Source: Isurus oxyrinchus
Lineage: Eukaryota
Length of the DNA: 64,000 bases
Reading direction: 5' to 3'
Assembly: GCA_026770705.1 (NCBI GenBank)
Contig: JANJGN010002079.1
Span: 1 to 64,000, forward strand
A program made the position numbers and the translations under genes. The first letter of the stretch is position 1; each line of letters starts with the position of its first letter. Below are positions 1-19,000 of the stretch, one piece after another. The notes beneath the pieces are model-generated. The model was given only the letters and a program-made list of their open reading frames with translations. It had not been told where the DNA came from and made no database searches.

Positions 1-1507
1 GAGGGGAGGGTCTTCGATGGGAGAGTGAGGGGATTAGAGGGAGGGTCTTCGATGGGAGAGTGAGGGGATTAGAGGGGAGGGTCTTTGATGGGAGAACGAG
101 GGGATTAGAGGGGAGGGTCTTCGATGGGAGAGTGAGGGGATTAGAGGGAGGGTCTTCGATGGGAGAGGAAGGGTCTTCGATGGGAGAGTGAGGGGATTAG
201 AGGAGATGCTCTTCGATGGGAGGGTGAGGGGATTAGAGGGGAGGGTCTTCGATGGGAGAGTGAGGGGATTAGAGGGAGGGTCTTCGATGGGAGAGTGAGG
301 GGATTAGAGGGAGGGTCTTCGATGGGAGAGTGAGGGGATTAGAGGGAGGGTCTTCGATGGGAGAGTGAGGGGATTAGAGGGATGGTCTTCGATGGGAGAG
401 TGAGGGGATTAGAGGGATGGTCTTCGATGGGAGAGTGAGGGGATTAGAGGGATGGGTCTTCGATGGGAGAGTGAGGGGATTAGAGGGGAGGGTCTTCGAT
501 GGGAGAGTGAGGGGATTAGAGGGGATGGTCTTCGATGGGAGAGTGAGGGGATTAGAGGGGGATGGTCTTCGATGGGAGGGTGAGGGGATTAGAGGGATGG
601 TCTTCGATGGGAGGGTGAGGGGATTAGAGGAGATGGTCTTCGATGGGAGGGTGAGGGGATTAGAGGGAGGGTCTTCGATGGGAGAGTGAGGGGATTAGAG
701 GGAGGGTCTTCGATGGGAGAGTGAGGGGATTAGAGGGGAGGGTCTTCGATGGGAGAGTGAGGGGATTAGAGGGAGGGTCTTCGATGGGAGAGTGAGGGGA
801 TTAGAGGGAGGGTCTTCGCTGGGAGAGTGAGGGGATTAGAGGGGAGGGTCTTCGATGGGAGAGTGAGGGGATTAGAGGGATGGTCCTTCGATGGGAGAGT
901 GAGGGGATTAGAGGGATGGTCTTCGATGGGAGAGTGAGGGGATTAGAGGGGAGGGTCTTCGATGGGAGAGTGAGGGGATTAGAGGGAGGGTCTTCGATGG
1001 GAGAGTGAGGGGATTAGAGGGAGGGTCTTCGATGGGAGAGTGAGGGGATTAGAGGGATGGTCTTCGATGGGAGAGTGAGGGGATTAGAGGGATGGTCTTC
1101 GATGGGAGAGTGAGGGGATTAGAGGGAGGGTCTTCGATGGGAGAGTGAGGGGATTAGAGGGAGGGTCTTCGATGGGAGAGTGAGGGGATTAGTGGAGTGT
1201 CTTCGATGGGAGAGTGAGGGGATTAGAGGGATGGTCCTCGATGGGAGAGTGAGGGGATTAGAGGGAGGGTCTTCGATGGGAGAGTGAGGGGATTAGAGGG
1301 AGGGTCTTCGATGGGAGAGTGAGGGGATTAGAGGGGAGGGTCTTCGATGGGAGAGTGAGGGGATTAGAGGGATGGTCTTCGATGGGAGAGTGAGGGGATT
1401 AGAGGGATGGTCTTCGATGGGAGAGTGAGGGGATTAGAGGGGGAGGGTCTTCAATGGGAGAGTGAGGGGATTAGAGGGGATGGTCTTTGCTGGGAGGGTT
1501 GAGGGGG
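1..1507 (+). repeat. G-rich minisatellite, 35-37-bp unit (GGGAGAGTGAGGGGATTAGAGGGA[G/T]GGTCTTCGAT), ~42 copies, open at the window start
   Basis: Directly visible period of 35 (GATGGG at 251 and 286); degenerates at ~1450-1507. Confidence 0.97.
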
Positions 1508-1661
1508 TCCATCCAGTTAGCTCAGCACAGGCCCGGGGTAAGAGCCTGGGCCTCTTCCCTCCGTCTGCAGTGCCTCCATTTCACGACGACTCCATCGTCT
1601 TGACGCAGATGACAGCTCCAGGCCTCAGCGAGGGGTGGGAGGGGCGGCGACCATGACACCC

Positions 1662-1667
1662 CTATCC
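1662..1667 (-). CDS. TAPBPL: Probable terminal exon coding portion (Gly-stop; GGA TAG), followed by 3' UTR
   Basis: Minus strand gttaac-tcccgctctgctttcag|GGA TAG: branch-like TTAAC (1689-1685), pyrimidine tract and CAG|G. This is the best acceptor I see downstream of the 1877 donor and gives a 210-nt intron. Its use is inferred. Confidence 0.55.
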   Translation of the reverse strand, partial: G

Positions 1668-1782
1668 CTGAAAGCAGAGCGGGAGTTAACGCGGCGTGAG
1701 GAGGGGCTAGACGAGGGGAGCACGGCGGTCGGTGGGGGGGTGGGTTTCCGTCGATCGAGCAGACAGGGAAGGCAGGGCTTGG

Positions 1783-1836
1783 CGTCACTTCGAAGAGGCA
1801 GGCTTCCGGGCCTAGTGGAGGCCATTTTGTACGTCA
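1783..1836. promoter_or_regulatory. Possible regulatory motif cluster (CRE half-sites, ETS, YY1) in CpG-rich unique sequence
   Basis: CGTCA 1783-1787, CTTCCGG 1803-1809, GCCATTTTG 1821-1829, TACGTCA 1830-1836. These are motif matches only. Confidence 0.3.
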
Positions 1837-1877
1837 AGCCGGGCAAACAGGCCGGAGGCTTGGCGCGGTCAGCTCAC

Positions 1878-1906
1878 CTTCTTCTGTCCTGTCCCGTTAC
1901 TGGGTC
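1878..1906 (-). CDS. TAPBPL: 29-nt cytoplasmic-tail micro-exon, (G)PSNGTGQKK; extends to 1869 (KKVS-stop) if the donor is not used
   Basis: Branch point CTAAC at 1951-1947, a long (TC)n polypyrimidine tract and tgcag|GA acceptor at 1907/1906. Strong donor AAG|gtgagc at 1878/1877. The phase-1 start matches the TM exon. Confidence 0.75.
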
Positions 1907-2024
1907 CTGCAGAGGGGGGAGGGAGAGAGAGAGAGAGAGGAGACGGGTTAGAGTCCGGGGGGGCTCGAGGTTGAGGCCGTTGAGCTCAGGATGGGGCCGG
2001 GGCCAGCGGCCGGAGGTTTCTTAC

Positions 2025-2108
2025 CCTGAGAGGGTCGGCAGAGGTACAGGAGGGTCAGCAGGAAGAGGACCGAGGAGACGATGAGTCCAGGCATTGCGAT
2101 GGGGTAAC
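2025..2108 (-). CDS. TAPBPL: Transmembrane exon of the same TAPBPR-like gene
   Basis: Acceptor cccttttactcccccccctacag|GT at 2109/2108 and donor CAG G|gtaaga at 2025/2024; 84 nt, phase 1-1, in frame with the IgC exon. Encodes (G)YPIAMPGLIVSSVLFLLTLLYLCRPSQ(G), a ~21-aa hydrophobic stretch followed by Arg. Confidence 0.85.
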
Positions 2109-2189
2109 CTGTAGGGGGGGGAGTAAAAGGGAGGGTCAAGGGGTCAGCCGAACTGAGACGAGGGCTCCCAGAAACAGTGGGGTAAAGGT

Positions 2190-2854
2190 GGGGGGGATTA
2201 ACCCTCTCACCCACCCCCTCCCAGTTACACACACACACACCGGGCAGCCTCTTCCCCTATCGGAGGGGGGATTAACCCTCTTACCCACCCCCTCCCAGTT
2301 ACACACACTCACACACCGGGCAGCCCCTTCCCCTATCGGAGGGGGGATTAACCCTCTCACTCACCTCCTCCCAGTTACACACACACACACACACACCGGG
2401 CAGCCCCTTCCCCTATCAGAGAGGGGATTAACCCTCTCACCCACCCCCTCCCAGTTACACACACACACACACCGGGCAGCCCCTTCCCCTATCGGAGGGG
2501 GGATTAACCCTCTCACCCACCCCCTCCCAGTTACACACACACACACCGGGCAGCCCCTTCCCCTATCGGAGGGGGGGGATTAACCCTCTCACCCACCTCC
2601 TCCCAGTTACACACACACACACCGGGCAGCCCCTTCCCCTATCGGAGGGGGATTAACCCTCTCACCCACCCCCTCCCAGTTACACACACACACACACACA
2701 CACACACACCGGGCAGCCCCTTCCCCTATCGGAGGGGGATTAACCCTCTCACTCACCCCCTCCCAGTTACACACACACACACACACACACACACAACGGG
2801 CAGCCCCTTCCCCTATCAGAGGGGGAATTAACCCTCTCACCCACCCCCTCCCAG

Positions 2855-2887
<33 letters not shown>

Positions 2888-3380
2888 GGGCAGCCCCTTC
2901 CCCTATCGGAGGGGGGATTAACCCTCTCACCCACCCCCTCCCAGTTACACACACACACACACACACACCGGGCAGCCCCTTCCCCTATCGGAGGGGGGTT
3001 TAACCCTCTCACCCACCCCCTCCCAGTTACACACACACACACACCGGGCAGCCCCTTCCCCTATCGGAGGGGGGATTAACCCTCTCACCCACCCCCTCCC
3101 AGTTACACACACACACACACCGGGCAGCCCCTTCCCCTATCGAAGGGGGGATTAACCCTCTCACCCACCCCCTCCCAGTTACACGCACACACACCGGGCA
3201 GCCCCTTCCCCTATCGGAGGGGGGGATTAACCCTCTCACCCACCCCCTCCCAGTTACACACACACACACACACCGGGCAGCCCCTTCCCCTTTCGAAGGG
3301 GGGATTAACCCTCTCACCCACCCCCCTCCCAGTTACACACACACACACACACACCGGGCAGCCCCTTCCCCTATCGGAGG
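2190..3380 (+). repeat. Intronic minisatellite, 15 copies of a 73-90-bp unit with an embedded variable (CA)n: GGGGGATTAACCCTCTCACCCACCCCCTCCCAGTT(AC)nCGGGCAGCCCCTTCCCCTATCGGA
   Basis: 15 TTAACCCT anchors counted between ~2198 and ~3305; fills ~90% of the 1303-nt intron 2109-3411. Confidence 0.96.
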
Positions 3381-3411
3381 GAGAGGGGAGGGGGAGTACC
3401 ACTGCCAGTAC

Positions 3412-3741
3412 CTGTTGGAGCGTGAAGTCGGAGGGAGACACGGAGAGGCTCCTCGAGGGCGATGTGAGTTACCTCGCAGGTGTAGACTGAGGAAGTCCCC
3501 TCGAGGCTGGGAGTGACCGACACCTGCGAAGAGAGGTTGTAGGTCCCGTCCTGATTGCGGCGGTGGCTGGAGTAGGAGACCCCGGGGAGGGCCAGAGGGC
3601 CCTGGTCATCGGCCAGGCTCTCCTGGGACCACTTGACGGACACATCCAGGGGATAGTACCGGGAAATCTCGCAGGCGAGGTCCTGGCGCACCCCCGCCAC
3701 AAAATGCAGGGTCTCCGCCGTCAGCACCGCGTGAGGCGGCT
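3412..3741 (-). CDS. TAPBPL: Internal exon encoding the IgC1 domain of a tapasin-related protein (TAPBPR-like MHC class I chaperone/peptide editor)
   Basis: Minus-strand acceptor tgtgtcttttttacag|AG at 3742/3741 and donor ACA G|gtactg at 3412/3411; 330 nt, phase 1-1 as is typical of Ig exons. Translation: (E)PPHAVLTAETLHFVAGVRQDLACEISRYYPLDVSVKWSQESLADDQGPLALPGVSYSSHRRNQDGTYNLSSQVSVTPSLEGTSSVYTCEVTHIALEEPLRVSLRLHAPT(G). It has the C1-set hallmarks C..YYP..V.W, DGTY and YxCxVxH. The motifs YYPLDV and YTCxVTHIxLEEPL match human TAPBPR as I recall it better than tapasin (FYPSGG). The paralogue call is from recall, not a search. Confidence 0.88.
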
Positions 3742-3787
3742 CTGTAAAAAAGACACACAGAGTCAACCCTCTCCCGGCGGAGAGAGA

Positions 3788-3833
3788 CCCCCCCCCCCCC
3801 CCACCCCCCCCCCCCCCCCCACACCCCCCCCCC
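3788..3833 (+). repeat. Interrupted poly-C tract (poly-G on the pre-mRNA strand)
   Basis: Runs of C15, C17 and C10 separated by A or ACA, ~45 nt upstream of the IgC acceptor. Confidence 0.9.
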
Positions 3834-3856
3834 TCCGCCACCCACTGACCCAACAC

Positions 3857-6800
3857 TCGCTCAGGCCCCTCGCTCAGTCCCCTCGCTCAGTCCCCCACTC
3901 TCTCTCAGTCCCCTCGCTCAGTCCCCTCGCTCAGTCCCCCACTCTCTCTCAGTCCCCTCGCTCAGTCCCCTCGCTCAGTCCCCTCGCTCAGTCCCCCACT
4001 CTCTCTCAGTCCCCTCGCTCAGTCCCCTCGCTCAGTCCCCCACTCTCTCTCAGTCCCCTCGCTCAGTCCCCCACTCTCTCTCAGTCCCCCTCGCTCAGTC
4101 CCCTCGCTCAGTCCCCCACTCTCTCTCAGTCCCCTCGCTCAGTCCCCTCGCTCAGTCCCCCACTCTCTCCCAGTCCCCTCGCTCAGTCCCCTCGCTCAGT
4201 CCCCCTCGCTCAGTCCCCCACTCTCTCTCAGTCCCCTCGCTCAGTCCCCCACTCTCTCTCAGTCCCCTCGCTCAGTCCCCCCACTCTCTCTCAGTCCCCT
4301 CGCTCAGTCCCCCACTCTCTCTCAGTCCCCTCGCTCAGTCCCCTCGCTCAGTCCCCCACTCTCTCTCAGTCCCCTTGCTCAGTCCCCTCGCTCAGTCCCC
4401 TCGCTCAGTCCCCCACTCTCTCTCAGTCCCCTCGCTCAGTCCCCCACTCTCTCTCAGTCCCCCTCGCTCAGTCCCCTCGCTCAGTCCCCCACTCTCTCTC
4501 AGTCCCCTCGCTCAGTCCCCCACTCTCTCTCAGTCCCCTCGCTCAGCTCCCCTCGCTCAGTCCCCCACTCTCTCTCAGTCCCCTCGCTCAGTCCCCTCGC
4601 TCAGTCCCCCACTCTCTCTCTGTCCCCTCGCTCAGTCCCCCACCCTCTCTCAGTCCCCTCGCTCAGTCCCCTCGCTCAGTCCCCCACTCTCTCTCAGTCC
4701 CCTCGCTCAGTCCCCCTCGCTCAGTCCCCCACTCTCTCTCAGTCCCCTCGCTCAGTCCCCTCGCTCAGTCCCCCACTCTCTCTCAGTCCCCTCGCTCAGT
4801 CCCCCACTCTCTCTCAGTCCCCTCGCTCAGTCCCCTCGCTCAGTCCCCCACTCTCTCTCAGTCCCCTCGCTCAGTCCCCCACTCTCTCTCAGTCCCCTCG
4901 CTCAGTCCCCTCGCTCAGTCCCCTCGCTCAGTCCCCCCACTCTCTCTCAGTCCCCTCGCTCAGTCCCCTCGCTCAGTCCCCCTCGCTCAGTCCCCCACTC
5001 TCTCAGTCCCCTCGCTCAGTCCCCCACTCTCTCTCAGTCCCCTCGCTCAGTCCCCTCGCTCAGTACCCTCGCTCAGTCCCCCACTCTCTCTCAGTCCCCT
5101 CGCTCAGTCCCCTCGCTCAGTCCCCCACTCTCTCTCAGTCCCCTCGCTCAGTCCCCTCGCTCAGTCCCCCACTCTCTCTCTGTCCCCTCGCTCAGTCCCC
5201 TCGCTCAGTCCCCCACTCTCTCTCAGTCCCCTCGCTCAGTCCCCTCGCTCAGTCCCCCACTCTCTCTCAGTCCCCTCGCTCAGTCCCCTCGCTCAGTCCC
5301 CTCGCTCAGTCCCCCACTCTCTCTCAGTCCCCTCGCTCAGTCCCCTCGCTCAGTCCCCCACTCTCTCTCAGTCCCCTCGCTCAGTCCCCCACTCTCTCTC
5401 AGTCCCCTCGCTCAGTCCCCTCGCTCAGTCCCCCACTCTCTCTCAGTCCCCTCGCTCAGTCCCCTCGCTCAGTCCCCCACTCTCTCCCAGTCCCCTCGCT
5501 CAGTCCCCTCGCTCAGTCCCCTCGCTCAGTCCCCCACTCTCTCTCAGTCCCCTCGCTCAGTCCCCCACTCTCTCTCAGTCCCCTCGCTCAGTCCCCCACT
5601 CTCTCTCAGTCCCCTCGCTCAGTCCCCCACTCTCTCTCAGTCCCCTCGCTCAGTCCCCTCGCTCAGTCCCCCACTCTCTCTCAGTCCCCTTGCTCAGTCC
5701 CCTCGCTCAGTCCCCTCGCTCAGTCCCCCACTCTCTCTCAGTCCCCTCGCTCAGTCCCCCACTCTCTCTCAGTCCCCTCGCTCAGTCCCCTCGCTCAGTC
5801 CCCTCGCTCAGTCCCCCACTCTCTCTCAGTCCCCTCGCTCAGTCCCCCACTCTCTCTCAGTCCCCTCGCTCAGTCCCCTCGCTCAGTCCCCCACTCTCTC
5901 TCAGTCCCCTCGCTCAGTCCCCCACTCTCTCTCAGTCCCCTCGCTCAGTCCCCTCGCTCAGTCCCCTCGCTCAGTCCCCCACTCTCTCTGTCCCCCTCGC
6001 TCAGTCCCCCACTCTCTCTCAGTCCCCCTCGCTCAGTCCCCTCGCTCAGTCCCCCCACTCTCTCTCAGTCCCCTCGCTCAGTCCCCCACTCTCGCTTAGT
6101 CCCCTCGCTCAGTCCCCTCGCTCAGTCCCCCACTCTCTCTCAGTCCCCTCGCTCAGTCCCCCACTCTCTCTCATTCCCCTCGCTCAGACCGCCACTCTCT
6201 CTCAGTCCCCTCGCTCAGTCCCCCACTCTCTCTCAGTCCCCTCGCTCAGTCCCCCACTCTCTCTCAGTCCCCTCGCTCAGTCCCCTCGCTCAGTCCCCCA
6301 CTCTCTCTCAGACCCCTCGCTCAGTCCCCTCGCTCAGTCCCCCCACTCTCTCTCAGTCCCCTCGCTCAGTCCCCCACTCTCTCTCAGTCCCCTCGCTCAG
6401 TCCCCTCGCTCAGTCCCCCACTCTCTCAGTCCCCTCGCTCAGTCCCCTCGCTCAGTCCCCCACTCTCTCTCAGTCCCCTCGCTCAGTCCCCTCGCTCAGT
6501 CCCCCACTCTCTCTCCGTCCCCTCGCTCAGTCCCCCACTCTCTCTCAGTCCCCTCGCTCAGTCCCCTCACTCAGTCCCCTCGCTCAGTCCCCCACTCTCT
6601 CTCAGTCCCCTCGCTCAGTCCCCTCGGTCAGTCCCCCACTCTCTCTCAGTCCCCTCGCTCAGTCCCCCACTCTCTCTCAGTCCCCTCGCTCAGTCCCCCA
6701 CTCTCTCTCAGTCCCCTCGCTCAGTCCCCCACTCTCTCTCAGTCCCCTCGCTCAGTCCCCCACTCTCTCTCAGTCCCCTCGCTCAGTCCCCCACTCTCTC

Positions 6801-7017
6801 TCAGTCCCCTCGCTCAGTCCCCTCGCTCAGTCCCCCACTCTCTCTCAGTCCCCTCGCTCAGTCCCCTCGCTCAGTCCCCCACTCTCTCTCAGTCCCCTCG
6901 CTCAGTCCCCGACTCTCTCTCAGTCCCCTCGCTCAGTCCCCCACTCTCTCTCAGTCCCCTCGCTCAGTCCCCGACTCTCTCTCAGTCCCCTCGCTCAGTC
7001 CCCCACTCTCTCTCAGT
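3857..7017 (+). repeat. Two-monomer minisatellite: A = CTCAGTCCCCTCG (13 bp) and B = CTCAGTCCCCCACTCTCT (18 bp), interspersed as AB/AAB/AAAB
   Basis: Directly visible over ~3.16 kb; strongly pyrimidine-rich on the + strand. Confidence 0.96.
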
Positions 7018-10000
7018 GTGATATCTGTACACTGACTGGTGTCTCTCAGTCTCTGTCTCTCTCAGGGAGATATCTGTACACTGACTGGTGTATCTCAGTC
7101 CCCTCTCTCTCTCAGGGAGATATCTGTACACTGACTGGTGTCTCTCAGTCTCTGTCTCTCTCAGGGAGATATCTGTACACTGACTGGTGTATCTCAGTCC
7201 CCTCTCTCTCAGGGAGATATCTGTACACTGACTGGTGTCTCTCAGTCCCCTCTCTCTCAGGGAGATATCTGTACACTGACTGGTGTCTCTCAGTCCCTCT
7301 CTCTCAGGGAGATATCTGTACATCGACTGGTGTCTCTAAGTCTACTCCCTCTCTCTCTCAGGGAGATATCTGTACACTGACTGGTATCTCTCAGTCCCCT
7401 CTCTCTCAGGGAGATATCTGTACACTGACTGGTGTCTCTCAGACCCTCTCTCTCTCAGGGAGATATCTGTGCACTGACTGGTGTCTCTCAGTTCCCTCTC
7501 TCTCAGGGATGTATCTGTACACTGACTGGTGTCTCTCAGTCCGCTCTCTCTCAGGGATGTATCTGTACACTGACTGGTGTCTCTCAGTCCCTCTCTCCCT
7601 CAGGGAGATATGTGTACACTGACTGGTGTCTCTCAGTCCCCTCTCTCTCAGGGATGTATCTGTACACTGACTGGTGTCTCTCAGTCCCCTCTCTCTCAGG
7701 GAGATATCTGTACACTGACTGGTGTCTCTCAGTCCCCTCTCTCTCTCTCAGGGAGATATCTGTACACTAACTGGTGTCTCTCAGTCCCTCTCTCTCTCAG
7801 GGAGATATCTGTACACTGACTGGTGTCTCTCAGTCTCTCTCTCTCTCTCAGGGAAATATCTGTACACTGACTGGTGTCTCTCAGTCCCTCTCTCTCAGGG
7901 TGAAATCTGTAGACTGACTGGTGTCTCTCAGTCCCCTCTCTCTCTGGGAGTTATCTGTACACTGACTGGTGTCTCTCAGTCCCTCTCTCTCAGGGAGATA
8001 TCTGTACACTGACTGGTGTCTCTACGTCTACTCTCTCTCTCTCTCTCAGGGAGATATCTGTACACTGACTGGTGTCTCTCAGTCCCTCTCTCTCAGGGAG
8101 ATATCTGTACACTGACTAGTGTCCCTCAGTCCCCCCTCTCTCTCAGGGAGATATCTGTACACTGACTGGTGTCTCTCAGTCCCCTCTCTCTCAGGGAGAT
8201 ATCTGTACACTGACTGGTGTATCTCAGTCCCTCTCTCTCAGGGAGATATCTGTACACTGACTGGTGTCTCTCAGTCTCCTCTCTCTCAGGGAGAGATCTG
8301 TACACTGACTGGTGTCTCTCAGTCCCCTCTCTCTCAGGGAGATATCTGTACACTGACTGGTGTCTCTCAGTCCCTCTCTCTCAGGGAGATATCTGTACAC
8401 TGACTGGTGTCCCTCAGTCCCTCTCTCTCTCTCAGGGAGATATCTGTACACTGACTGGTGTATCTCAGTCCCTCTATCTCAGGGAGATATCTGTACACTG
8501 ACTGGTGTCTCTCAGTCCCTCTCTCTCTCTCAGGGAGATATCTGTACACTGACTGGTGTATCTCAGTCCCTCTCTCTCAGGGAGATATCTGTACACTGAC
8601 TGGTGTCTCTCAGTCCCTCTCTCTCTCTCAGGGAGATATCTGTACACTGACTGGTGTATCTCAGTCCCTCTCTCTCAGGGAGATATCTGTACACTGACTG
8701 GTGTCTCTAAGTCTACTCTCTCTCTCTCTCAGGGAGATATCTGTACACTGACTCGTGTCTCTCAGTCCCTCTCTCTCTCAGGGAGAAATCTGCACACTGA
8801 CTGTTGTCTCTCAGTCCCTCTCTCTCAGGGAGATATCTGTACACTGACTGGTGTCTCTCAGTCCCTCTCTCTCTCAGGGAGATATCTGTACACTTACTGG
8901 TGTCTCTCAGTCTCTCTCTCTCTCAGGGAGATATCTGTACACTGACTGGTGTCTCTCAGTCCCCCTCTCTCAGTGTGATATCTGTACACTGACTCGTGTC
9001 TCTCAGTCCCTCTCTCTCTCAGGGAGAAATCTGCACACTGACTGGTGTCTCTCAGTCCCTCTCTCTCAGGGAGATATCTGTACACTGACTCGTGTCTCTC
9101 AGTCCCCTCTCTCTCAGTGAGATATCTGTACACTGACTGGTGTCTCTCAGTCCCTCTCTCTCTCAGGGATGTATCTGTACACTGACTGGTGTCTCTCAGT
9201 CCCCTCTCTCTCAGGGAGATATCTGCACACTGACTGGTGTCTCTCAGTCCCTCTCTCTCAGGGAGATATCTGTACACTGACTGATGTCTCTTAGTCCCTC
9301 TCTCTCTCTCAGGGAGATATCTGTACACTAACTGGTGTATCTCAGTCCCTCTATCTCAGGGAGATATCTGTACACTGACTGGTGTCTCTACGTCTACTCT
9401 CTCTCTCTCTCAGGGAGATATCTGTACACTGACTGGTGTCTCTCAGTCCCTCTCTCTCAGGGAGATATCTGTACACTGACTGGTGTCCCTCAGTCCCCCC
9501 TCTCTCTCAGGGAGATATCTGTACACTGACTGGTGTCTCTCAGTCCCCTCTCTCTCAGGGAGATATCTGTACACTGACTGGTGTCTCTCAGTCCCTCTCT
9601 CTCTCAGGGAGATATCTGTACACTGACTGGTGTCTCTCAGTCCCCTCTCTCTCTCTCAGGGAGATATCTGTACACTGACTGGTGTGTCTCAGTCTCCTCT
9701 CTCTCAGGGAAATATCTGTACACTGACTGGTGTCTCTCAGTCCCTCTCTCTCAGGGAGATATCTGTACACTGACTGGTGTCTCTCAGTCTCTCTCTCTCT
9801 CAGGGAGATATCTGTACACTGACTGGTGTCTCTCAGTCCCTCTCTCTCTCAGGGAGATATCTGTACACTAACTGGTTTCTCTCAGACCCCTCTCTCTCTC
9901 AGGGAGATATCTGTACACTGACTCGTGTCTCTCAGTCCCCTCTCTCTCAGGTAGATATCTGTACACTGACTGGTGTCTCTCAGTCTCTCTCTCTCTCTCA

Positions 10001-13000
10001 GGGAGATATCTGTACACTGACTGGTGTCTCTCAGTCCCTCTCTCTCAGGGAGATATCTGTACACTGACTCGTGTCTCTCAGTCCCCTCTCTCTCAGTGAG
10101 ATATCTGTACACTGACTGGTGTCTCTCAGTCCCTCTCTCTCTCAGGGATGTATCTGTACACTGACTGGTGTCTCTCAGTCCCCTCTCTCTCAGGGAGATA
10201 TCTGCACACTGACTGGTGTCTCTCAGTCCCTCTCTCTCAGGGAGATATCTGTACACTGACTGATGTCTCTTAGTCCCTCTCTCTCTCTCAGGGAGATATC
10301 TGTACACTAACTGGTGTATCTCAGTCCCTCTATCTCAGGGAGATATCTGTACACTGACTGGTGTCTCTACGTCTACTCTCTCTCTCTCTCAGGGAGATAT
10401 CTGTACACTGACTGGTGTCTCTCAGTCCCTCTCTCTCAGGGAGATATCTGTACACTGACTGGTGTCCCTCAGTCCCCCCTCTCTCTCAGGGAGATATCTG
10501 TACACTGACTGGTGTCTCTCAGTCCCCTCTCTCTCAGGGAGATATCTGTACACTGACTGGTGTCTCTCAGTCCCTCTCTCTCTCAGGGAGATATCTGTAC
10601 ACTGACTGGTGTCTCTCAGTCCCCTCTCTCTCTCTCAGGGAGATATCTGTACACTGACTGGTGTGTCTCAGTCTCCTCTCTCTCAGGGAAATATCTGTAC
10701 ACTGACTGGTGTCTCTCAGTCCCTCTCTCTCAGGGAGATATCTGTACACTGACTGGTGTCTCTCAGTCTCTCTCTCTCTCAGGGAGATATCTGTACACTG
10801 ACTGGTGTCTCTCAGTCCCTCTCTCTCTCAGGGAGATATCTGTACACTAACTGGTTTCTCTCAGACCCCTCTCTCTCTCAGGGAGATATCTGTACACTGA
10901 CTCGTGTCTCTCAGTCCCCTCTCTCTCAGGTAGATATCTGTACACTGACTGGTGTCTCTCAGTCTCTCTCTCTCTCTCAGGGAGATATCTGTACACTGAC
11001 TGGTGTCTCTCAGTCCCTCTCTCTCAGGGAGATATCTGTACACTGACTGGTGTCTCTACGTCTACTCTCTCTCTCTCTCAGGGAGATATCTGTACACTGA
11101 CTGGTGTCTCTCAGTCCCTCTCTCTCAGGGAGATATCTGTACACTGACTAGTGTCCCTCAGTCCCCCCTCTCTCTCAGGGAGATATCTGTACACTGACTG
11201 GTGTCTCTCAGTCCCCTCTCTCTCAGGGAGCTATCTGTACACTGACTGGTGTCTCTTAGTCCCTCTCTCTCTCAGGGAGATATCTGTACAATGACTGGTG
11301 TCTCTCAGTCCCCTCTCTCTCTCTCAGGGAGATATCTGTACTCTGACTGGTGTCTCTCAGTCCCCTCTCTCTCTCAGGGAGATATCTGTACACTGACTCG
11401 TGTCTCTCAGTCCCTCTCTCTCTCAGGGAGAAATCTGCACACTGACTGTTGTCTCTCAGTCCCTCTCTCTCAGGGAGATATCTGTACACTGACTGGTGTC
11501 TCTCAGTCCCTCTCTCTCTCAGGGAGATATCTGTACACTTACTGGTGTCTCTCAGTCTCTCTCTCTCTCAGGGAGATATCTGTACACTGACTGGTGTCTC
11601 TCAGTCCCCCTCTCTCAGTGTGATATCTGTACACTGACTCGTGTCTCTCAGTCCCTCTCTCTCTCAGGGAGAAATCTGCACACTGACTGGTGTCTCTCAG
11701 TCCCTCTCTCTCAGGGAGATATCTGTACACTGACTCGTGTCTCTCAGTCCCCTCTCTCTCAGTGAGATATCTGTACACTGACTGGTGTCTCTCAGTCCCT
11801 CTCTCTCTCAGGGATGTATCTGTACACTGACTGGTGTCTCTCAGTCCCCTCTCTCTCAGGGAGATATCTGCACACTGACTGGTGTCTCTCAGTCCCTCTC
11901 TCTCAGGGAGATATCTGTACACTGACTGATGTCTCTTAGTCCCTCTCTCTCTCTCAGGGAGATATCTGTACACTAACTGGTGTATCTCAGTCCCTCTATC
12001 TCAGGGAGATATCTGTACACTGACTGGTGTCTCTACGTCTACTCTCTCTCTCTCTCAGGGAGATATCTGTACACTGACTGGTGTCTCTCAGTCCCTCTCT
12101 CTCAGGGAGATATCTGTACACTGACTGGTGTCCCTCAGTCCCCCCTCTCTCTCAGGGAGATATCTGTACACTGACTGGTGTCTCTCAGTCCCCTCTCTCT
12201 CAGGGAGATATCTGTACACTGACTGGTGTCTCTCAGTCCCTCTCTCTCTCAGGGAGATATCTGTACACTGACTGGTGTCTCTCAGTCCCCTCTCTCTCTC
12301 TCAGGGAGATATCTGTACACTGACTGGTGTGTCTCAGTCTCCTCTCTCTCAGGGAAATATCTGTACACTGACTGGTGTCTCTCAGTCCCTCTCTCTCAGG
12401 GAGATATCTGTACACTGACTGGTGTCTCTCAGTCTCTCTCTCTCTCAGGGAGATATCTGTACACTGACTGGTGTCTCTCAGTCCCTCTCTCTCTCAGGGA
12501 GATATCTGTACACTAACTGGTTTCTCTCAGACCCCTCTCTCTCTCAGGGAGATATCTGTACACTGACTCGTGTCTCTCAGTCCCCTCTCTCTCAGGTAGA
12601 TATCTGTACACTGACTGGTGTCTCTCAGTCTCTCTCTCTCTCTCAGGGAGATATCTGTACACTGACTGGTGTCTCTCAGTCCCTCTCTCTCAGGGAGATA
12701 TCTGTACACTGACTCGTGTCTCTCAGTCCCCTCTCTCTCAGTGAGATATCTGTACACTGACTGGTGTCTCTCAGTCCCTCTCTCTCTCAGGGATGTATCT
12801 GTACACTGACTGGTGTCTCTCAGTCCCCTCTCTCTCAGGGAGATATCTGCACACTGACTGGTGTCTCTCAGTCCCTCTCTCTCAGGGAGATATCTGTACA
12901 CTGACTGATGTCTCTTAGTCCCTCTCTCTCTCTCAGGGAGATATCTGTACACTAACTGGTGTATCTCAGTCCCTCTATCTCAGGGAGATATCTGTACACT

Positions 13001-16000
13001 GACTGGTGTCTCTACGTCTACTCTCTCTCTCTCTCAGGGAGATATCTGTACACTGACTGGTGTCTCTCAGTCCCTCTCTCTCAGGGAGATATCTGTACAC
13101 TGACTGGTGTCCCTCAGTCCCCCCTCTCTCTCAGGGAGATATCTGTACACTGACTGGTGTCTCTCAGTCCCCTCTCTCTCAGGGAGATATCTGTACACTG
13201 ACTGGTGTCTCTCAGTCCCTCTCTCTCTCAGGGAGATATCTGTACACTGACTGGTGTCTCTCAGTCCCCTCTCTCTCTCTCAGGGAGATATCTGTACACT
13301 GACTGGTGTGTCTCAGTCTCCTCTCTCTCAGGGAAATATCTGTACACTGACTGGTGTCTCTCAGTCCCTCTCTCTCAGGGAGATATCTGTACACTGACTG
13401 GTGTCTCTCAGTCTCTCTCTCTCTCAGGGAGATATCTGTACACTGACTGGTGTCTCTCAGTCCCTCTCTCTCTCAGGGAGATATCTGTACACTAACTGGT
13501 TTCTCTCAGACCCCTCTCTCTCTCAGGGAGATATCTGTACACTGACTCGTGTCTCTCAGTCCCCTCTCTCTCAGGTAGATATCTGTACACTGACTGGTGT
13601 CTCTCAGTCTCTCTCTCTCTCTCAGGGAGATATCTGTACACTGACTGGTGTCTCTCAGTCCCTCTCTCTCAGGGAGATATCTGTACACTGACTGGTGTCT
13701 CTACGTCTACTCTCTCTCTCTCTCAGGGAGATATCTGTACACTGACTGGTGTCTCTCAGTCCCTCTCTCTCAGGGAGATATCTGTACACTGACTAGTGTC
13801 CCTCAGTCCCCCCTCTCTCTCAGGGAGATATCTGTACACTGACTGGTGTCTCTCAGTCCCCTCTCTCTCAGGGAGCTATCTGTACACTGACTGGTGTCTC
13901 TTAGTCCCTCTCTCTCTCAGGGAGATATCTGTACAATGACTGGTGTCTCTCAGTCCCCTCTCTCTCTCTCAGGGAGATATCTGTACTCTGACTGGTGTCT
14001 CTCAGTCCCCTCTCTCTCTCAGGGAGATATCTGTACGCTGACTGGTGTCTCTCAGTCGCTCTCTCTCTCAGGGAGATATCTGTACACTGACTGGTGTCTC
14101 TCAGTCCCTCTCTCTCAGCGAGATATCTGTACACTGACTGGTGTCTCTCAGTCTCTCTCTCTCTCAGGGAGATATCTGTACACTGACTGGTGCCTCTCAG
14201 TCCCCTCTCTCTCAGGGAGATATCTGTGCACTGACGGGTGTCTCTCAGTCCCCTCTCTCTCAGGGAGATATCTGTACACTGACTGGTGTCTCTCAGTCCC
14301 TCTCTCTCTCAGGGAGATATCTGTACACTGACTGGTGTCTCTCAGTCCCCTCTCTCTCTCAGGGAGATATCTGTACACTGACTGGTGTGTCTCAGTCTCC
14401 TCTCTCTCAGGGAGAGATCTGTACACTGACTGGTGTCTCTCAGTCCCCTCTCTCTCAGGGAGATATCTGTACACTGACTGGTGTCTCTCAGTCCCTCTCT
14501 CTCAGGGAGATATCTGTACACTGACTGGTGTCCCTCAGTCCCTCTCTCTCTCTCAGGGAGATATCTGTACACTGACTGGTGTATCTCAGTCCCTCTATCT
14601 CAGGGAGATATCTGTACACTGACTGGTGTCTCTCATTCCCTCTCTCTCTCTCAGGGAGATATCTGTACACTGACTGGTGTATCTCAGTCCCTCTCTCTCA
14701 GGGAAATATCTGTACACTGACTGGTGTCTCTCAGTCTCCTCTCTCTCAGGGAGAGATCTGTACACTGACTGGTGTCTCTCAGTCCCCTCTCTCTCAGGGA
14801 GATATCTGTACACTGACTGGTGTCTCTCAGTCCCTCTCTCTCAGGGAGATATCTGTACACTGACTGGTGTCCCTCAGTCCCTCTCTCTCTCTCAGGGAGA
14901 TATCTGTACACTGACTGGTCTATCTCAGTCCCTCTCTCTCAGGGAGATATCTGTACACTGACTGGTGTCTCTCAGTCCCTCTCTCTCAGGGAGATATCTG
15001 TACACTGACTAGTGTCCCTCAGTCCCCCCTCTCTCTCAGGGAGATATCTGTACACTGACTGGTGTCTCTCAGTCCCCTCTCTCTCAGGGAGCTATCTGTA
15101 CACTGACTGGTGTCTCTTAGTCCCTCTCTCTCTCAGGGAGATATCTGTACAATGACTGGTGTCTCTCAGTCCCCTCTCTCTCTCTCAGGGAGATATCTGT
15201 ACTCTGACTGGTGTCTCTCAGTCCCCTCTCTCTCTCAGGGAGATATCTGTACGCTGACTGGTGTCTCTCAGTCGCTCTCTCTCTCAGGGAGATATCTGTA
15301 CACTGACTGGTGTCTCTCAGTCCCTCTCTCTCAGCGAGATATCTGTACACTGACTGGTGTCTCTCAGTCTCTCTCTCTCTCAGGGAGATATCTGTACACT
15401 GACTGGTGCCTCTCAGTCCCCTCTCTCTCAGGGAGATATCTGTGCACTGACGGGTGTCTCTCAGTCCCCTCTCTCTCAGGGAGATATCTGTACACTGACT
15501 GGTGTCTCTCAGTCCCTCTCTCTCTCAGGGAGATATCTGTACACTGACTGGTGTCTCTCAGTCCCCTCTCTCTCTCAGGGAGATATCTGTACACTGACTG
15601 GTGTGTCTCAGTCTCCTCTCTCTCAGGGAGAGATCTGTACACTGACTGGTGTCTCTCAGTCCCCTCTCTCTCAGGGAGATATCTGTACACTGACTGGTGT
15701 CTCTCAGTCCCTCTCTCTCAGGGAGATATCTGTACACTGACTGGTGTCCCTCAGTCCCTCTCTCTCTCTCAGGGAGATATCTGTACACTGACTGGTGTAT
15801 CTCAGTCCCTCTATCTCAGGGAGATATCTGTACACTGACTGGTGTCTCTCATTCCCTCTCTCTCTCTCAGGGAGATATCTGTACACTGACTGGTGTATCT
15901 CAGTCCCTCTCTCTCAGGGAAATATCTGTACACTGACTGGTGTCTCTCAGTCTCCTCTCTCTCAGGGAGAGATCTGTACACTGACTGGTGTCTCTCAGTC

Positions 16001-19000
16001 CCCTCTCTCTCAGGGAGATATCTGTACACTGACTGGTGTCTCTCAGTCCCTCTCTCTCAGGGAGATATCTGTACACTGACTGGTGTCCCTCAGTCCCTCT
16101 CTCTCTCTCAGGGAGATATCTGTACACTGACTGGTCTATCTCAGTCCCTCTCTCTCAGGGAGATATCTGTACACTGACTGGTGTCTCTCAGTCCCTCTCT
16201 CTCTCTCAGGGAGATATCTGTACACTGACTGGTGTATCTCAGTCCCTCTGTCTCAGGGAGATATCTGTACACTGACTGGTGTCTCTCAGTCCCTCTCTCT
16301 CTCTCAGGGAGATATCTGTACACTGACTGGTGTATCTCAGTCCCTCTCTCTCAGGGAGATATCTGTACACTGACTGGTGTCTCTAAGTCTACTCTCTCTC
16401 TCTCTCAGGGAGATATCTGTACACTGACTCGTGTCTCTCAGTCCCTCTCTCTCTCAGGGAGAAATCTGCACACTGACTGTTGTCTCTCAGTCCCTCTCTC
16501 TCAGGGAGATATCTGTACACTGACTGGTGTCTCTCAGTCCCTCTCTCTCTCAGGGAGATATCTGTACACTGACTGGTGTCTCTCAGTCCCTCTCTCTCTC
16601 AGGGAGATATCTGTACACTGACTGGTGTCTCTCAGTCCCCCTCTCACAGTGAGATATCTGTACACTGACTCGTGTCTCTCAGTCCCTCTCTCTCTCAGGG
16701 AGAAATCTGCACACTGACTGGTGTCTCTCAGTCCCTCTCTCTCAGGGAGATATCTGTACACTGACTGGTGTCTCTCAGTCCCCTCTCTCTCAGTGAGATT
16801 TCTGTACACTGTCTGGTGTCTCTCAGTCCCTCTCTCTCTCAGGGACGTATCTGTACACTGACTGGTGTCTCTCAGTCCCCTCTCTCTCAGGGAGATATCT
16901 GCACACTGACTGGTGTCTCTCAGTCCCTCTCTCTCAGGGAGATATCTGTACACTGACTGATGTCTCTCAGTCCCTCTCTCTCTCTCAGGGAGATATCTGT
17001 ACACTGACTGGTGTATCTCAGTCCCTCTATCTCAGGGAGATATCTGTACACTGACTGGTGTCTCTCAGTCCCTCTCTCTCTCAGGGAGATATCTGTACAC
17101 TGACTGGTGTCTCTCAGTCCCTCTCTCTCAGGGAGATATCTGTACACTGACTGGTGTCCCTCAGTCCCCCCTCTCTCTCAGGGAGATATCTGTACACTGA
17201 CTGGTGTCTCTCAGTCCCCTCTCTCTCAGGGAGATATCTGTACACTGACTGGTGTCTCTCAGTCCCTCTCTCTCTCAGGGAGATATCTGTACACTGACTG
17301 GTGTCTCTCAGTCCCCTCTCTCTCTCTCAGGGAGATATCTGTACACTGACTCGTGTCTCTCAGTCCCTCTCTCTCTCAGGGAAATATCTGTACACTGACT
17401 GGTGTCTCTCAGTCCCTCTCTCTCAGGGAGATATCTGTACACTGACTGGTGTCTCTCAGTCTCTCTCTCTCTCAGGGAGATATCTGTACACTGACTGGTG
17501 TCTCTCAGTCCCTCTCTCTCTCAGGGAGATAGCTGTACACTAACTGGTTTCTCTCAGACCCCTCTCTCTCTCAGGGAGATATCTGTACACTGACTCGTGT
17601 CTCTCAGTCCCCTCTCTCTCAGGTAGATATCTGTACACTGACTGGTGTCTCTCAGTCTCTCTCTCTCTCTCAGGGAGATATCTGTACACTGACTGGTGTC
17701 TCTCAGTCCCTCTCTCTCAGGGAGATATCTGTACACTGACTGGTGTCTCTACGTCTACTCTCTCTCTCTCTCAGGGAGATATCTGTACACTGACTGGTGT
17801 CTCTCAGTCCCTCTCTCTCAGGGAGATATCTGTACACTGACTAGTGTCCCTCAGTCCCCCCTCACTCTCAGGGAGATATCTGTACACTGACTGGTGTCTC
17901 TCAGTCCCCTCTCTCTCAGGGAGATATCTGTACACTGACTGGTGTCTCTCAGTCCCTCTCTCTCTCAGGGAGATATCTGTACACAGACTGGTGTCTCTCA
18001 GTCCCCTCTCTCTCTCTCAGGGAGATATCTGTACTCTGACTGGTGTCTCTCAGTCGCTCTCTCTCTCAGGGAGATATCTGTACACTGACTGGTGTCTCTC
18101 AGTCCCTCTCTCTCAGCGAGATATCTGTACACTGACTGGTGTCTCTCAGTCTCTCTCTCTCTCAGGGAGATATCTGTACACTGACTGGTGCCTCTCAGTC
18201 CCCTCTCTCTCAGGGAGATATCTGTGCACTGACGGGTGTCTCTCAGTCCCCTCTCTCTCAGGGAGATATCTGTACACTGACTGGTGTCTCTCAGTCCCTC
18301 TCTCTCTCAGGGAGATATCTGTACACTGACTGGAGTCTCTCAATCCCCTCTCTCTCTCAGGGAGATATCTGTACACTGACTGGTGTGTCTCAGTCTCCTC
18401 TCTCTCAGGGAGAGATCTGTACACTGACTGGTGTCTCTCAGTCCCCTCTCTCTCAGGGAGATATCTGTACACTGACTGGTGTCTCTCAGTCCCTCTCTCT
18501 CAGGGAGATATCTGTACACTGACTGGTGTCCCTCAGTCCCTCTCTCTCTCTCAGGGAGATATCTGTACACTGACTGGTGTATCTCAGTCCCTCTATCTCA
18601 GGGAGATATCTGTACACTGACTGGTGTCTCTCATTCCCTCTCTCTCTCTCAGGGAGATATCTGTACACTGACTGGTGTATCTCATTCCCTCTCTCTCAGG
18701 GAAATATCTGTACACTGACTGGTGTCTCTCAGTCTCCTCTCTCTCAGGGAGAGATCTGTACACTGACTGGTGTCTCTCAGTCCCCTCTCTCTCAGGGAGA
18801 TATCTGTACACTGACTGGTGTCTCTCAGTCCCTCTCTCTCTCTCAGGGAGATATCTGTACACTGACTGGTGTATCTCAGTCCCTCTGTCTCAGGGAGATA
18901 TCTGTACACTGACTGGTGTCTCTCAGTCCCTCTCTCTCTCTCAGGGAGATATCTGTACACTGACTGGTGTATCTCAGTCCCTCTCTCTCAGGGAGATATC

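What the first reader, a model, noticed from the sequence alone, without database searches (positions are those of the whole stretch)
1662..1906. A splice donor that doubles as a KKxx ER-retrieval signal: possible localisation switch in a TAPBPR-like protein
Seen: the micro-exon ends CAG AAG AAG|GTG AGC TGA. Read through (stop 1871-1869), the protein ends ...GQKKVS*, with Lys at -4 and -3, a canonical COPI di-lysine motif. Spliced to the 1667 acceptor it ends ...GQKKG*, with Lys at -3 and -2, which is non-canonical. Established: tapasin is ER-retrieved through a C-terminal KKxx (human KKAE), while human TAPBPR lacks such a motif and traffics beyond the ER. Inference: this gene either keeps an ancestral tapasin-like ER signal on a TAPBPR-type ectodomain, or toggles between ER-resident and exported forms by retaining a 210-nt intron. 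Caveat: AAG|GTGAG is also simply the donor consensus, so the overlap may be chance.
Basis: partly seen in the sequence, partly recalled or inferred. Interest (0 to 1): 0.8.

Follow-up and report, generated by a model that had tools for sequence, protein, structure and literature searches.

The report
Shark TAPBPR ending in KKVS
The last coding exon of a shark TAPBPR (MHC class I peptide-editor) gene ends in Lys-Lys-Val-Ser-stop, a tapasin-style ER-retrieval motif, and in the transcripts available the donor-like GTGAGC is read through, not spliced.

Summary
On the minus strand there is an IgC1 exon (3741-3412), a TM exon (2108-2025), then CAG AAG AAG GTG AGC TGA (stop 1871-1869) and a good acceptor at 1669-1668.

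The "micro-exon" is not a micro-exon in the RNA I could see. Assembled transcripts from three runs in two related sharks splice IgC to TM and TM to 1906, then run unbroken through 1877 and past 1668. Their depth there equals that of the coding exons. No 1877->1668 joint appeared in 0 of 4 runs. In the sister species the GT is TT, the TGA is kept, and the tail is RKLS. That matches the NCBI white-shark model XP_041036048.1, which is 93% identical over the IgC exon.

So the protein ends GQKKVS*. The gene belongs to the TAPBPR clade (tree support 100/99), not to tapasin.

The splicing toggle is unsupported.

Side result: 18 of 145 named TAPBPR-type models from at least 8 lineages, bats included, end in dibasic COPI-type motifs. 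I found no paper saying so. COPI binding and localisation are untested.

The parts
3412..3741 (-). IgC1 (C1-set) exon of the TAPBPR orthologue, phase 1 at both ends
   Evidence: Translation. Pfam C1-set E 4e-12. Best PDB matches are human TAPBPR chains 5opi_C and 5wer_C, E about 5e-20. 93% identical to white-shark XP_041036048.1. RNA contigs join 3410/3412 to 2106/2108 in X1 and X7.
2025..2108 (-). Transmembrane exon with no Lys or Arg inside the hydrophobic stretch
   Evidence: Translation. Spliced to the IgC exon (X1, X7) and to 1906 (X3 record 17; X1 and X7 loose ends at 2024).
1869..1906 (-). Coding start of the terminal exon: (G)PSNGTGQKKVS plus stop TGA 1871-1869.
   Evidence: Translation. 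Contigs are continuous across 1878/1877 in X1 (record 3), X3 (record 17) and X7 (record 24).
1872..1883 (-). Codons AAG AAG GTG AGC = K K V S, a KKxx-stop di-lysine motif. GTGAGC (1877-1872) looks like a 5' splice site but is not seen to be used.
   Evidence: In organism B, 1877 is T on the minus strand (GT becomes TT), 1872 changes synonymously, and the tail is RKLS*. The white-shark model has the same tail.
1662..1669 (-). Candidate 3' splice site (AG 1669-1668) followed by GGA TAG. It lies inside the 3'UTR as transcribed.
   Evidence: No joint to it in 0 of 4 runs. Contigs of X1, X3 and X7 pass over it unbroken.
1455..1868 (-). 3' untranslated region (minimum extent), running into the 35-bp satellite
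   Evidence: X1 record 3 reaches 1455 and X7 record 24 reaches 1458. Depth equals that of the coding exons (2.97 vs 3.8; 53.3 vs 54.9). No AATAAA, ATTAAA, AGTAAA or TATAAA on the minus strand of 1-1900.
2191..3381 (.). 76-bp minisatellite with (GT)n that fills the IgC-to-TM intron
   Evidence: TRF: 15 copies, 84% matches. Skipped in the RNA contigs.
3849..64000 (.). Tandem arrays upstream of the IgC exon: a 13/31/44-bp array at 3849-7003, then a 47/145-bp satellite from 7002 to the window end. Presumably these lie within the IgV-to-IgC intron.
   Evidence: TRF, uniform composition, and no non-repeat island beyond 3848. The X7 mRNA contig carries 1015 further letters upstream of 3741/3742 that do not lie on the stretch laid (1450-3760).

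Best explanation
This is the 3' end of the shark orthologue of TAPBPR (gene TAPBPL), the tapasin-related MHC class I peptide editor. Shown: after the IgC1 and TM exons, the last exon starts at 1906 and is not interrupted at 1877. The mRNA reads AAG AAG GTG AGC TGA straight through and continues as 3'UTR into the flanking satellite. The protein is therefore a type I membrane protein with a 17-residue cytosolic tail, CRPSQGPSNGTGQKKVS, ending in a canonical KKxx-COOH. Inferred: this end is bound by COPI coatomer and returns the protein from the cis-Golgi/ERGIC to the ER, as tapasin's di-lysine tail is reported to do. On that view this shark's TAPBPR works mainly in the ER and early Golgi, rather than travelling on as the main human isoform does. 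The GTGAGC is either a chance look-alike or the relic of a splice donor still used near this point in other sharks. In this lineage it supplies the 'xx' of the motif and is followed at once by the stop.
For: Gene structure and reading frame. TAPBPR identity: human TAPBPR chains E 4.5e-20 to 7.6e-20; no tapasin among the 60 listed; 101 of 109 identical to white-shark 'tapasin-related protein-like'; 4 shark proteins form a 100/99 clade inside a 100/99 TAPBPR clade, apart from tapasin at 100/99 and a third lineage at 100/100. Read-through is the expressed form. X3 record 17 is one contig carrying the end of the IgC exon, the whole TM exon, and 1905->1604. X1 record 3 spans 1893->1455. X7 record 24 spans 1907->1458. 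Depth of this stretch equals the exon depth, while the true intron 1918-1995 has depth 0 in all three. No 1877->1668 joint in 0 of 4 runs. Conservation: organism B has TT for GT, keeps TGA, and has the tail ...GQRKLS*. That is identical to the C-terminus of the NCBI white-shark models X1 and X2. RKxx is listed as a proven COPI variant in passages of PMC5798408 and PMC4757895. Family context: tapasin-lineage proteins end in K(x)Kxx in 3 of 4 tree rows plus the Heptranchias tapasin-like protein. Dibasic ends occur in 18 of 145 named TAPBPR-type models, against 33 of 3625 internal 5-mers of their last 30 residues.
Against: No localisation or COPI-binding data exist for any of these proteins. All runs were served as assembled contigs, which drop rare variants and carry no tissue or stimulus information, so a minor or inducible spliced form cannot be excluded. 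The X7 contigs break exactly on the two sides of the 29-nt segment, with a 30-letter overlap. That hints at a branch in the assembly graph, which I could not resolve. The motif is not general in sharks. Scyliorhinus (2 species) and Mustelus models stop five residues earlier (GPKDGTR/G*), and Heptranchias has AEVRPN* or a long tail. The tail evolves fast: 4 of the 12 residues GPSNGTGQKKVS differ between the two lamniforms. On a 29-row tree the motif needs at least 6 changes, so chance gain in a Lys-rich tail is a live alternative. Only the last three exons are in the window. TAPBPR identity of the whole gene rests on the 93%-identical white-shark protein.
Confidence: 0.6

Rival explanations
1. 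The 210-nt stretch 1877-1668 is a facultative intron. When retained the protein ends KKVS (ER-retrieved). When removed it ends KKG (escapes). The choice is regulated, for example by interferon or infection.
For: AAG|GTGAGC and the pyrimidine-rich acceptor at 1669-1668 are good consensus sites. Predicted isoforms of two other sharks diverge at or next to the aligned position: Heptranchias X1/X2 and Heterodontus X1-X4. Coelacanth and duck models also have alternative tails, of which only one carries KxKxx. Human TAPBPR tail splicing changes trafficking (PMC4008236 passages). The X7 contig break at the 29-nt segment is compatible with a graph branch.
Against: No 1877->1668 joint in 0 of 4 runs. 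Three contigs from three studies and two species cross both sites unbroken, at the same depth as the coding exons. The GT is TT in the sister species while the stop is kept. The NCBI white-shark models use the read-through end in both isoforms.
Confidence: 0.07
2. The KKVS end is real but has no sorting function. It is a chance product of a short, fast-drifting basic tail, and localisation of shark TAPBPR is set by other means, such as luminal partners or the TM segment.
For: The tail diverges quickly: 5 nucleotide and 4 amino-acid differences in the last 38 coding letters between the two lamniforms. Carcharhiniform and hexanchiform orthologues lack the motif. At least 6 state changes are needed on the 29-row tree.
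Against: Despite four replacements, the two lamniform tails both fit [KR]-K-x-x-stop. Dibasic ends are about 13-fold more frequent at the true C-terminus than at internal positions of the same tails: 18/145 against 33/3625. The rows are phylogenetically non-independent and are predicted models.
Confidence: 0.3
3. The locus is a decaying gene fragment stranded in satellite DNA, so its tail has no biological meaning.
For: The only non-repeat islands in 64 kb are 1507-2190 and 3382-3848. The upstream exons are not in the window.
Against: The exons are open and correctly phased. They are spliced in RNA contigs of three runs. In X7 they sit in a 1459-letter contig that continues 1015 letters upstream of the IgC exon. 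They are 93% identical in protein to an annotated full-length white-shark gene.
Confidence: 0.03

Closest known systems
White-shark 'tapasin-related protein-like' (Carcharodon carcharias XP_041036048.1 / XP_041036050.1, NCBI models)
   Same: Orthologue: 101 of 109 identical over the IgC exon. Same TM segment and same tail layout, ending four residues after GQ at the read-through stop.
   Different: Tail is RKLS instead of KKVS (Lys to Arg at -4, Val to Leu at -2). At DNA level the related species laid has TT where this window has the donor-like GT.
Human TAPBPR (TAPBPL gene; structures 5opi, 5wer, 7rno, 9c96)
   Same: Same clade in the tree and best structural-database match of the IgC exon. 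No basic residue in the TM segment. Its TM and tail are encoded by up to three exons, with alternative tail splicing that alters trafficking (PMC4008236 passages).
   Different: Human isoform 1 has a long tail ending ...RVSQPS with no di-lysine, and is described as not restricted to the ER (PMC4008236 passage). The shark tail is 17 residues long and ends KKVS.
Tapasin (TAPBP) C-terminal double-lysine retrieval signal
   Same: A type I membrane MHC-I chaperone with K(x)Kxx at the extreme C-terminus. Seen here in elephant-shark, lungfish and Heptranchias tapasin-type proteins. Its function as a retrieval signal is the title claim of Paulsson et al. 2006, seen only as reference 66 of PMC5824609.
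   Different: A different paralogue. Tapasin-lineage TM segments carry a Lys or Arg, which a passage of PMC5824609 links to TAP association. This protein has none.
Third tapasin-family lineage ('TAPBPL' in the sense of Grimholt 2018, PMC5824609)
   Same: Some members end in K(x)Kxx: caecilian KRKPY and an unnamed representative KKKPY. The paper notes an ER-retention signal in some of them (passage).
   Different: The window's gene is not in that clade (100/100 separation). My equating of that clade with Grimholt's lineage is presumed from names and taxa, not tested.

Membership tests
TAPBPR (tapasin-related protein, gene TAPBPL) | Membrane-proximal IgC1 domain closer to TAPBPR than to tapasin | tested here: met
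   the four best PDB sequences are human TAPBPR (E 4.5e-20 to 7.6e-20), followed by antibody chains, with no tapasin in the 60 listed. C1-set; 93% identical to a shark TAPBPR-type protein.
TAPBPR (tapasin-related protein, gene TAPBPL) | Orthology: groups with TAPBPR, not with tapasin or the third lineage, in a family tree | tested here: met
   using the full-length white-shark orthologue as proxy because only 3 exons lie in the window. Sharks plus TAPBPR have 100/99 support, tapasin 100/99, third lineage 100/100.
TAPBPR (tapasin-related protein, gene TAPBPL) | N-terminal domain plus IgV domain upstream of the IgC domain | tested here: inconclusive
   These exons are not in the window. The X7 mRNA contig continues 1015 letters upstream of the IgC exon. 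By my hand translation, its first 30 loose letters read as the end of an IgV domain like that of P0168.
TAPBPR (tapasin-related protein, gene TAPBPL) | No basic residue in the TM segment (tapasin's TAP-binding Lys is absent) | tested here: met
   GLIVSSVLFLLTLLYLC has no K or R. Tapasin-lineage rows have K or R in the TM segment. The feature is taken from a passage of PMC5824609.
COPI di-lysine ER-retrieval signal (KKxx / KxKxx-COOH) | Lys at -3 and at -4 or -5, counted from the true C-terminus | tested here: met
   ...GQKKVS*. The stop used is the transcribed one.
COPI di-lysine ER-retrieval signal (KKxx / KxKxx-COOH) | Located on the cytosolic tail of a type I membrane protein | tested here: met
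   A luminal Ig domain is followed by one hydrophobic segment and a 17-residue tail. The topology is inferred from sequence.
COPI di-lysine ER-retrieval signal (KKxx / KxKxx-COOH) | Binds coatomer and confers ER/ERGIC residence | not testable with these tools
   Needs reporter and binding assays.
   no 1877->1668 joint in 0 of 4 runs; the read-through stretch is at exon depth in 3 RNA-type runs. These are contigs only, so a rare form is not excluded.
   position 1877 is C>A on the plus strand in organism B (GT becomes TT). The white-shark protein has Leu there.

The most novel reading that the evidence does not exclude
A COPI-type dibasic C-terminus is an old and recurrent feature of TAPBPR, not a tapasin-only trait. 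It appears in lamniform sharks, a bullhead-shark isoform, coelacanth, lungfish, a frog, two caecilians, duck, six bats, rhino and an orangutan model, often on only one of several alternative tails. On this reading, the free post-ER trafficking of the main human and mouse isoform is a derived state. In some lineages, though not visibly in this shark, choice of tail exon could set where TAPBPR edits MHC class I.
Probability: 0.3. Interest if true: 0.6.

Novelty: new member of a known kind. Interest (0 to 1): 0.3.

Why it matters
TAPBPR is usually contrasted with tapasin partly by where it works: tapasin is held in the ER by a di-lysine tail, while human TAPBPR travels on. A shark TAPBPR whose transcribed C-terminus is KKVS, and the scatter of similar ends in other vertebrate TAPBPR models, suggest this contrast may be a mammalian-model view rather than a family rule. 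That is cheap to test with tail-swap reporters. It would bear on how the second MHC class I editing step was placed in the secretory pathway early in jawed-vertebrate evolution. The more striking claim, a splice donor acting as a localisation switch, is not supported here.

Tried and rejected
1. Splicing toggle. I looked for it in four runs and found no 1877->1668 joint. I rejected it as the main reading and keep it at about 7%.

2. Pseudogene in satellite. Rejected because the exons are open, spliced and transcribed, and 93% identical to an annotated gene.

3. Tapasin or third-lineage identity. Rejected and the tree.

4. The search for homologous proteins on residues 296-460 of the Heptranchias protein at E<=1e-10 returned only the query itself (1 of 591 candidates). 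That search was wasted. The whole-protein searches found the shark orthologues.

5. phmmer of the IgC exon against the 50% representatives (727 hits at E<=0.001, 150 listed). The top was dominated by multi-domain immunoglobulin heavy chains. I picked TAPBPR-like rows by hand, fetching 20 and 11.

6. Poly(A) signal. None of four hexamers is present on the minus strand of 1-1900, so the 3' end of the mRNA is unknown.

7. Earlier notes of this scan by place gave nothing near the locus. Notes by words and by genome only told me the genome is a shark's.

8. Literature. No paper held TAPBPR together with di-lysine (0 papers). TAPBPR with dilysine gave 1 paper, about adenovirus E3-19K. TAPBPR with KKXX gave 1 paper, about an engineered tapasin construct. 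The broader searches gave nothing on a TAPBPR di-lysine tail. Papers were read as passages only: PMC5824609, PMC4008236, PMC10751288, PMC9586880, PMC5798408, PMC4757895. Supplements are closed. The alignment in Additional file 1 of PMC5824609 may already show TAPBPR tails, and I could not see it. Subscription-journal papers (the original TAPBP-R and trout TAPBP-R descriptions, which I recall but did not see) were not searchable.

9. I could not decide whether GTGAGC is a relic of an ancestral donor, because no eukaryotic genome collection is on hand.

10. The joined (spliced) protein model was never built or searched. Only the IgC exon was used as a query. The TM exon and the tail were only translated, each on its own, and the tail piece was aligned on its own.

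Full report
WHAT IS IN THE SEQUENCE

The window is almost entirely tandem repeats. There is a 35-bp satellite at 1-1506, a 76-bp minisatellite at 2191-3381, a 13/31/44-bp array at 3849-7003, and a 47/145-bp satellite from 7002 to the end. The only non-repeat islands are 1507-2190 and 3382-3848. On the minus strand these islands hold three exon-like pieces.

- An Ig exon lies at 3741..3412, with phase 1 at both ends. It translates to PPHAVLTAETLHF...YTCEVTHIALEEPLRVSLRLHAPT.
- A transmembrane exon lies at 2108..2025 and reads YPIAMPGLIVSSVLFLLTLLYLCRPSQ.
- A segment starts at 1906 and reads (G)PSNGTGQKK, then GTG AGC TGA = V S stop.
- An AG at 1669-1668 is followed by GGA TAG.

WHICH GENE

- The Ig exon is a C1-set domain.
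- Against all PDB sequences, its four best matches are human TAPBPR chains (5opi_C, 5wer_C, 7rno_C, 9c96_C; E 4.5e-20 to 7.6e-20). Antibody constant domains follow, and no tapasin is among the 60 listed.
- A HMMER search of 1.84 billion representatives gave, among single-domain matches, a Heptranchias perlo "tapasin-related protein-like" (49% identity). It also gave TAPBPR proteins of sturgeon, caecilian, coelacanth, duck and lungfish; names come.
- Whole-protein searches seeded with the Heptranchias and Carcharodon proteins found orthologues in Carcharodon, Cetorhinus, Heterodontus, two Scyliorhinus species and Mustelus.
- The white-shark protein XP_041036048.1 is 101/109 identical to the window's IgC exon.
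- I built a 29-row maximum-likelihood tree. The rows were hand-picked: 4 sharks, 17 TAPBPR, 4 tapasin-type and 4 of a third lineage. Five rows are unnamed representatives. The sharks form a 100/99 clade inside a 100/99 TAPBPR clade, separate from tapasin (100/99) and the third lineage (100/100).
- The TM segment has no Lys or Arg, as in TAPBPR and unlike the tapasin-type rows.

So "TAPBPR-like" is right. It rests on the IgC, TM and tail exons plus the near-identical white-shark protein, because the N-terminal and IgV exons are outside the window.

IS 1878|1877 A SPLICE SITE?

I asked for runs holding 1510-3745 and laid four of them on 1450-3760. All four were served as contigs. X1 and X3 (organism A) are nearly identical to the window. 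X7 and X11 (organism B) differ by about 6%.

X1, X3 and X7 are transcript assemblies, because they carry exon-exon joints:
- The joint 2106->3410 (equivalent to 2108|3412) is in X1 record 4 and X7 record 25.
- X3 record 17 goes from the end of the IgC exon through the whole TM exon straight to 1905.
- The loose ends of X1 and X7 at 2024 read as the start of the 1906 segment.

The same X3 contig then runs unbroken from 1905 to 1604. That takes it through the donor-like site and 64 letters past the candidate acceptor. X1 record 3 covers 1893->1455 and X7 record 24 covers 1907->1458, both also unbroken.

The depth of this stretch equals that of the coding exons: 2.97 against 3.8 in X1, the same contig at 9.03 in X3, and 53.3 against 54.9 in X7. 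The true intron at 1918-1995 has depth 0 in all three.

The joints table lists no 1877->1668 joint in any of the 4 runs. The DNA-type run X11 shows no exon-exon joint, so the spliced contigs are not a retrocopy, at least in organism B.

The "micro-exon" is therefore the beginning of the terminal exon, and the protein ends ...GQKKVS*.

Caveats on this evidence:
- Contigs drop rare variants and say nothing about tissue or stimulus.
- In X7, the contig ending at 1878 and the contig starting at 1907 overlap by exactly 30 letters. That is what a branch in a k=31 graph would give. The branch could be unspliced pre-mRNA on the 5' side or an alternative continuation on the 3' side, and I could not tell which. 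The k value and this reading are my inference.

THE RELATIVE

In organism B the plus-strand differences 1877 C>A and 1872 G>A turn GTG AGC into TTG AGT. No difference is listed at 1871-1869 (9 further differences were not shown). The loose end at 2024 gives the preceding codons. By hand translation the tail is GPSDRTGQRKLS followed by the kept TGA. That is exactly the C-terminus of both NCBI white-shark models.

The donor GT is thus gone in the relative, while the stop and a [KR]-K-x-x end are kept. This holds despite 4 replacements in the 12 residues GPSNGTGQKKVS. RKxx is named as a proven COPI-recognised variant in passages of PMC5798408 and PMC4757895. I did not see the primary papers they cite.

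HOW IT MOST LIKELY WORKS

Shown: this is a type I membrane protein of the TAPBPR clade whose transcribed C-terminus is KKVS.

Inferred: the di-lysine end is bound by coatomer, and the protein is retrieved to the ER as reported for tapasin. That report is Paulsson 2006, seen only as a reference title. On this view the shark's TAPBPR would edit MHC class I in the ER and early Golgi.

I put about 0.9 on the transcript structure and about 0.55 on the sorting function.

WIDER PATTERN

Aligned shark tails show the motif is not general:
- Scyliorhinus and Mustelus models stop at GPKDGTR/G*.
- Heptranchias has ...GQAEV, then RPN* (X2) or a 30-residue extension (X1).
- Heterodontus X4 ends EEKVRAD* (KxRxx), while its X1-X3 isoforms have a long tail.

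The predicted isoforms of Heptranchias and Heterodontus diverge at or next to the aligned Val. An exon boundary near this point therefore probably exists in other sharks. GTGAGC in the window may be its relic, now read through to an adjacent stop. This is inference; I had no shark genomes to check it.

Across 145 named TAPBPR-type models end in a dibasic motif: 9 KKxx, 5 KxKxx, 3 RKxx and 1 KxRxx. I left out 30 unnamed rows and 2 tapasins. By comparison, 33 of 3625 internal 5-mers in the last 30 residues of the same models match. The 18 are:
- white shark (2 isoforms)
- Heterodontus X4
- coelacanth X2
- lungfish (2 isoforms)
- the frog Gastrophryne
- the caecilians Microcaecilia and Geotrypetes
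- duck
- six bats
- white rhinoceros
- an orangutan UniProt model

 These rows are predicted models, include several isoforms per species, and are phylogenetically dependent. On the 29-row tree the trait needs at least 6 changes.

Human isoform 1, mouse, turtles, crocodilians and ray-finned fishes lack the motif; teleost models end right after the TM segment. Grimholt 2018 treats an ER-retention signal as something tapasin and the third lineage share, as against TAPBPR (passage). I found no paper that ascribes a di-lysine end to TAPBPR itself, within the limits of that library and without supplements.

COMPARISON WITH THE KNOWN

The gene is an orthologue of TAPBPR. Its tail works like tapasin's (inferred), but it is not a tapasin. 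Alternative splicing of the TAPBPR tail is known in humans: the beta isoform's extra exon 7a lowers surface expression (PMC4008236 passages). A splicing switch is therefore a reasonable idea for the family, but it is not what the data show at this locus.

VERDICT

The "donor" is not used in the transcripts available and is not conserved. The KKxx reading is the expressed one.

This is a new member of a known kind: a TAPBPR orthologue carrying a known sorting motif, already implicit in the white-shark annotation. Interest is modest at 0.3. The broader, testable idea is that COPI-type tails are widespread in TAPBPR, and that the main human isoform's lack of one is a derived state. I give that a probability of about 0.3.

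Noticed in passing
window 3849-64000: The DNA upstream of the IgC exon is more than 60 kb of tandem repeat: a 13/31/44-bp array, then a 47/145-bp satellite, with no unique island. The IgV exon that the mRNA joins to 3741 lies beyond the window. So this intron appears to be a giant satellite block, if the assembly is right.
   Followed up: partly
window 2191-3381: The IgC-to-TM intron is filled by a 76-bp minisatellite with an internal (GT)n. A DNA contig of the related species (X11) skips 736 letters of it (joint 2648->3385), which indicates a different copy number.
   Followed up: no
window 1-1868: The 3'UTR runs from the stop into the 35-bp satellite (contigs reach 1455/1458). There is no AATAAA, ATTAAA, AGTAAA or TATAAA on the minus strand of 1-1900, so the polyadenylation site is unknown.
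   Followed up: partly
window 1878-1907 (run X7): Two X7 contigs end and begin exactly at the borders of the 29-nt segment, overlapping by 30 letters. This looks like a branch point in the assembly graph. Its cause is unresolved: unspliced pre-mRNA or an alternative continuation.
   Followed up: no
proteins P0178, P0188, P0195, P0203, P0293, P0294, P0310, P0280: TAPBPR models of a rhinoceros, six bats and an orangutan end in ...SKKKE, SKKKA, SKKEE or SRKKE, i.e. KKxx-type C-termini. Human isoform 1 and mouse do not.
   Followed up: partly
protein P0167 (Cetorhinus maximus, partial): After ...CRPSQG its tail continues IRVSWSPS... instead of PS(N/D).... This looks like a model that reads through the TM-exon donor, so its C-terminus is uninformative. 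I left it unscored.
   Followed up: no
proteins P0155/P0065/P0157 (Latimeria), P0100/P0160 (Anas), P0029/P0151 (Heptranchias), P0282-P0284 (Heterodontus): Several species have predicted alternative TAPBPR tails that diverge just after the juxtamembrane stretch. In coelacanth, duck and Heterodontus only one of the alternatives carries a dibasic C-terminus.
   Followed up: partly
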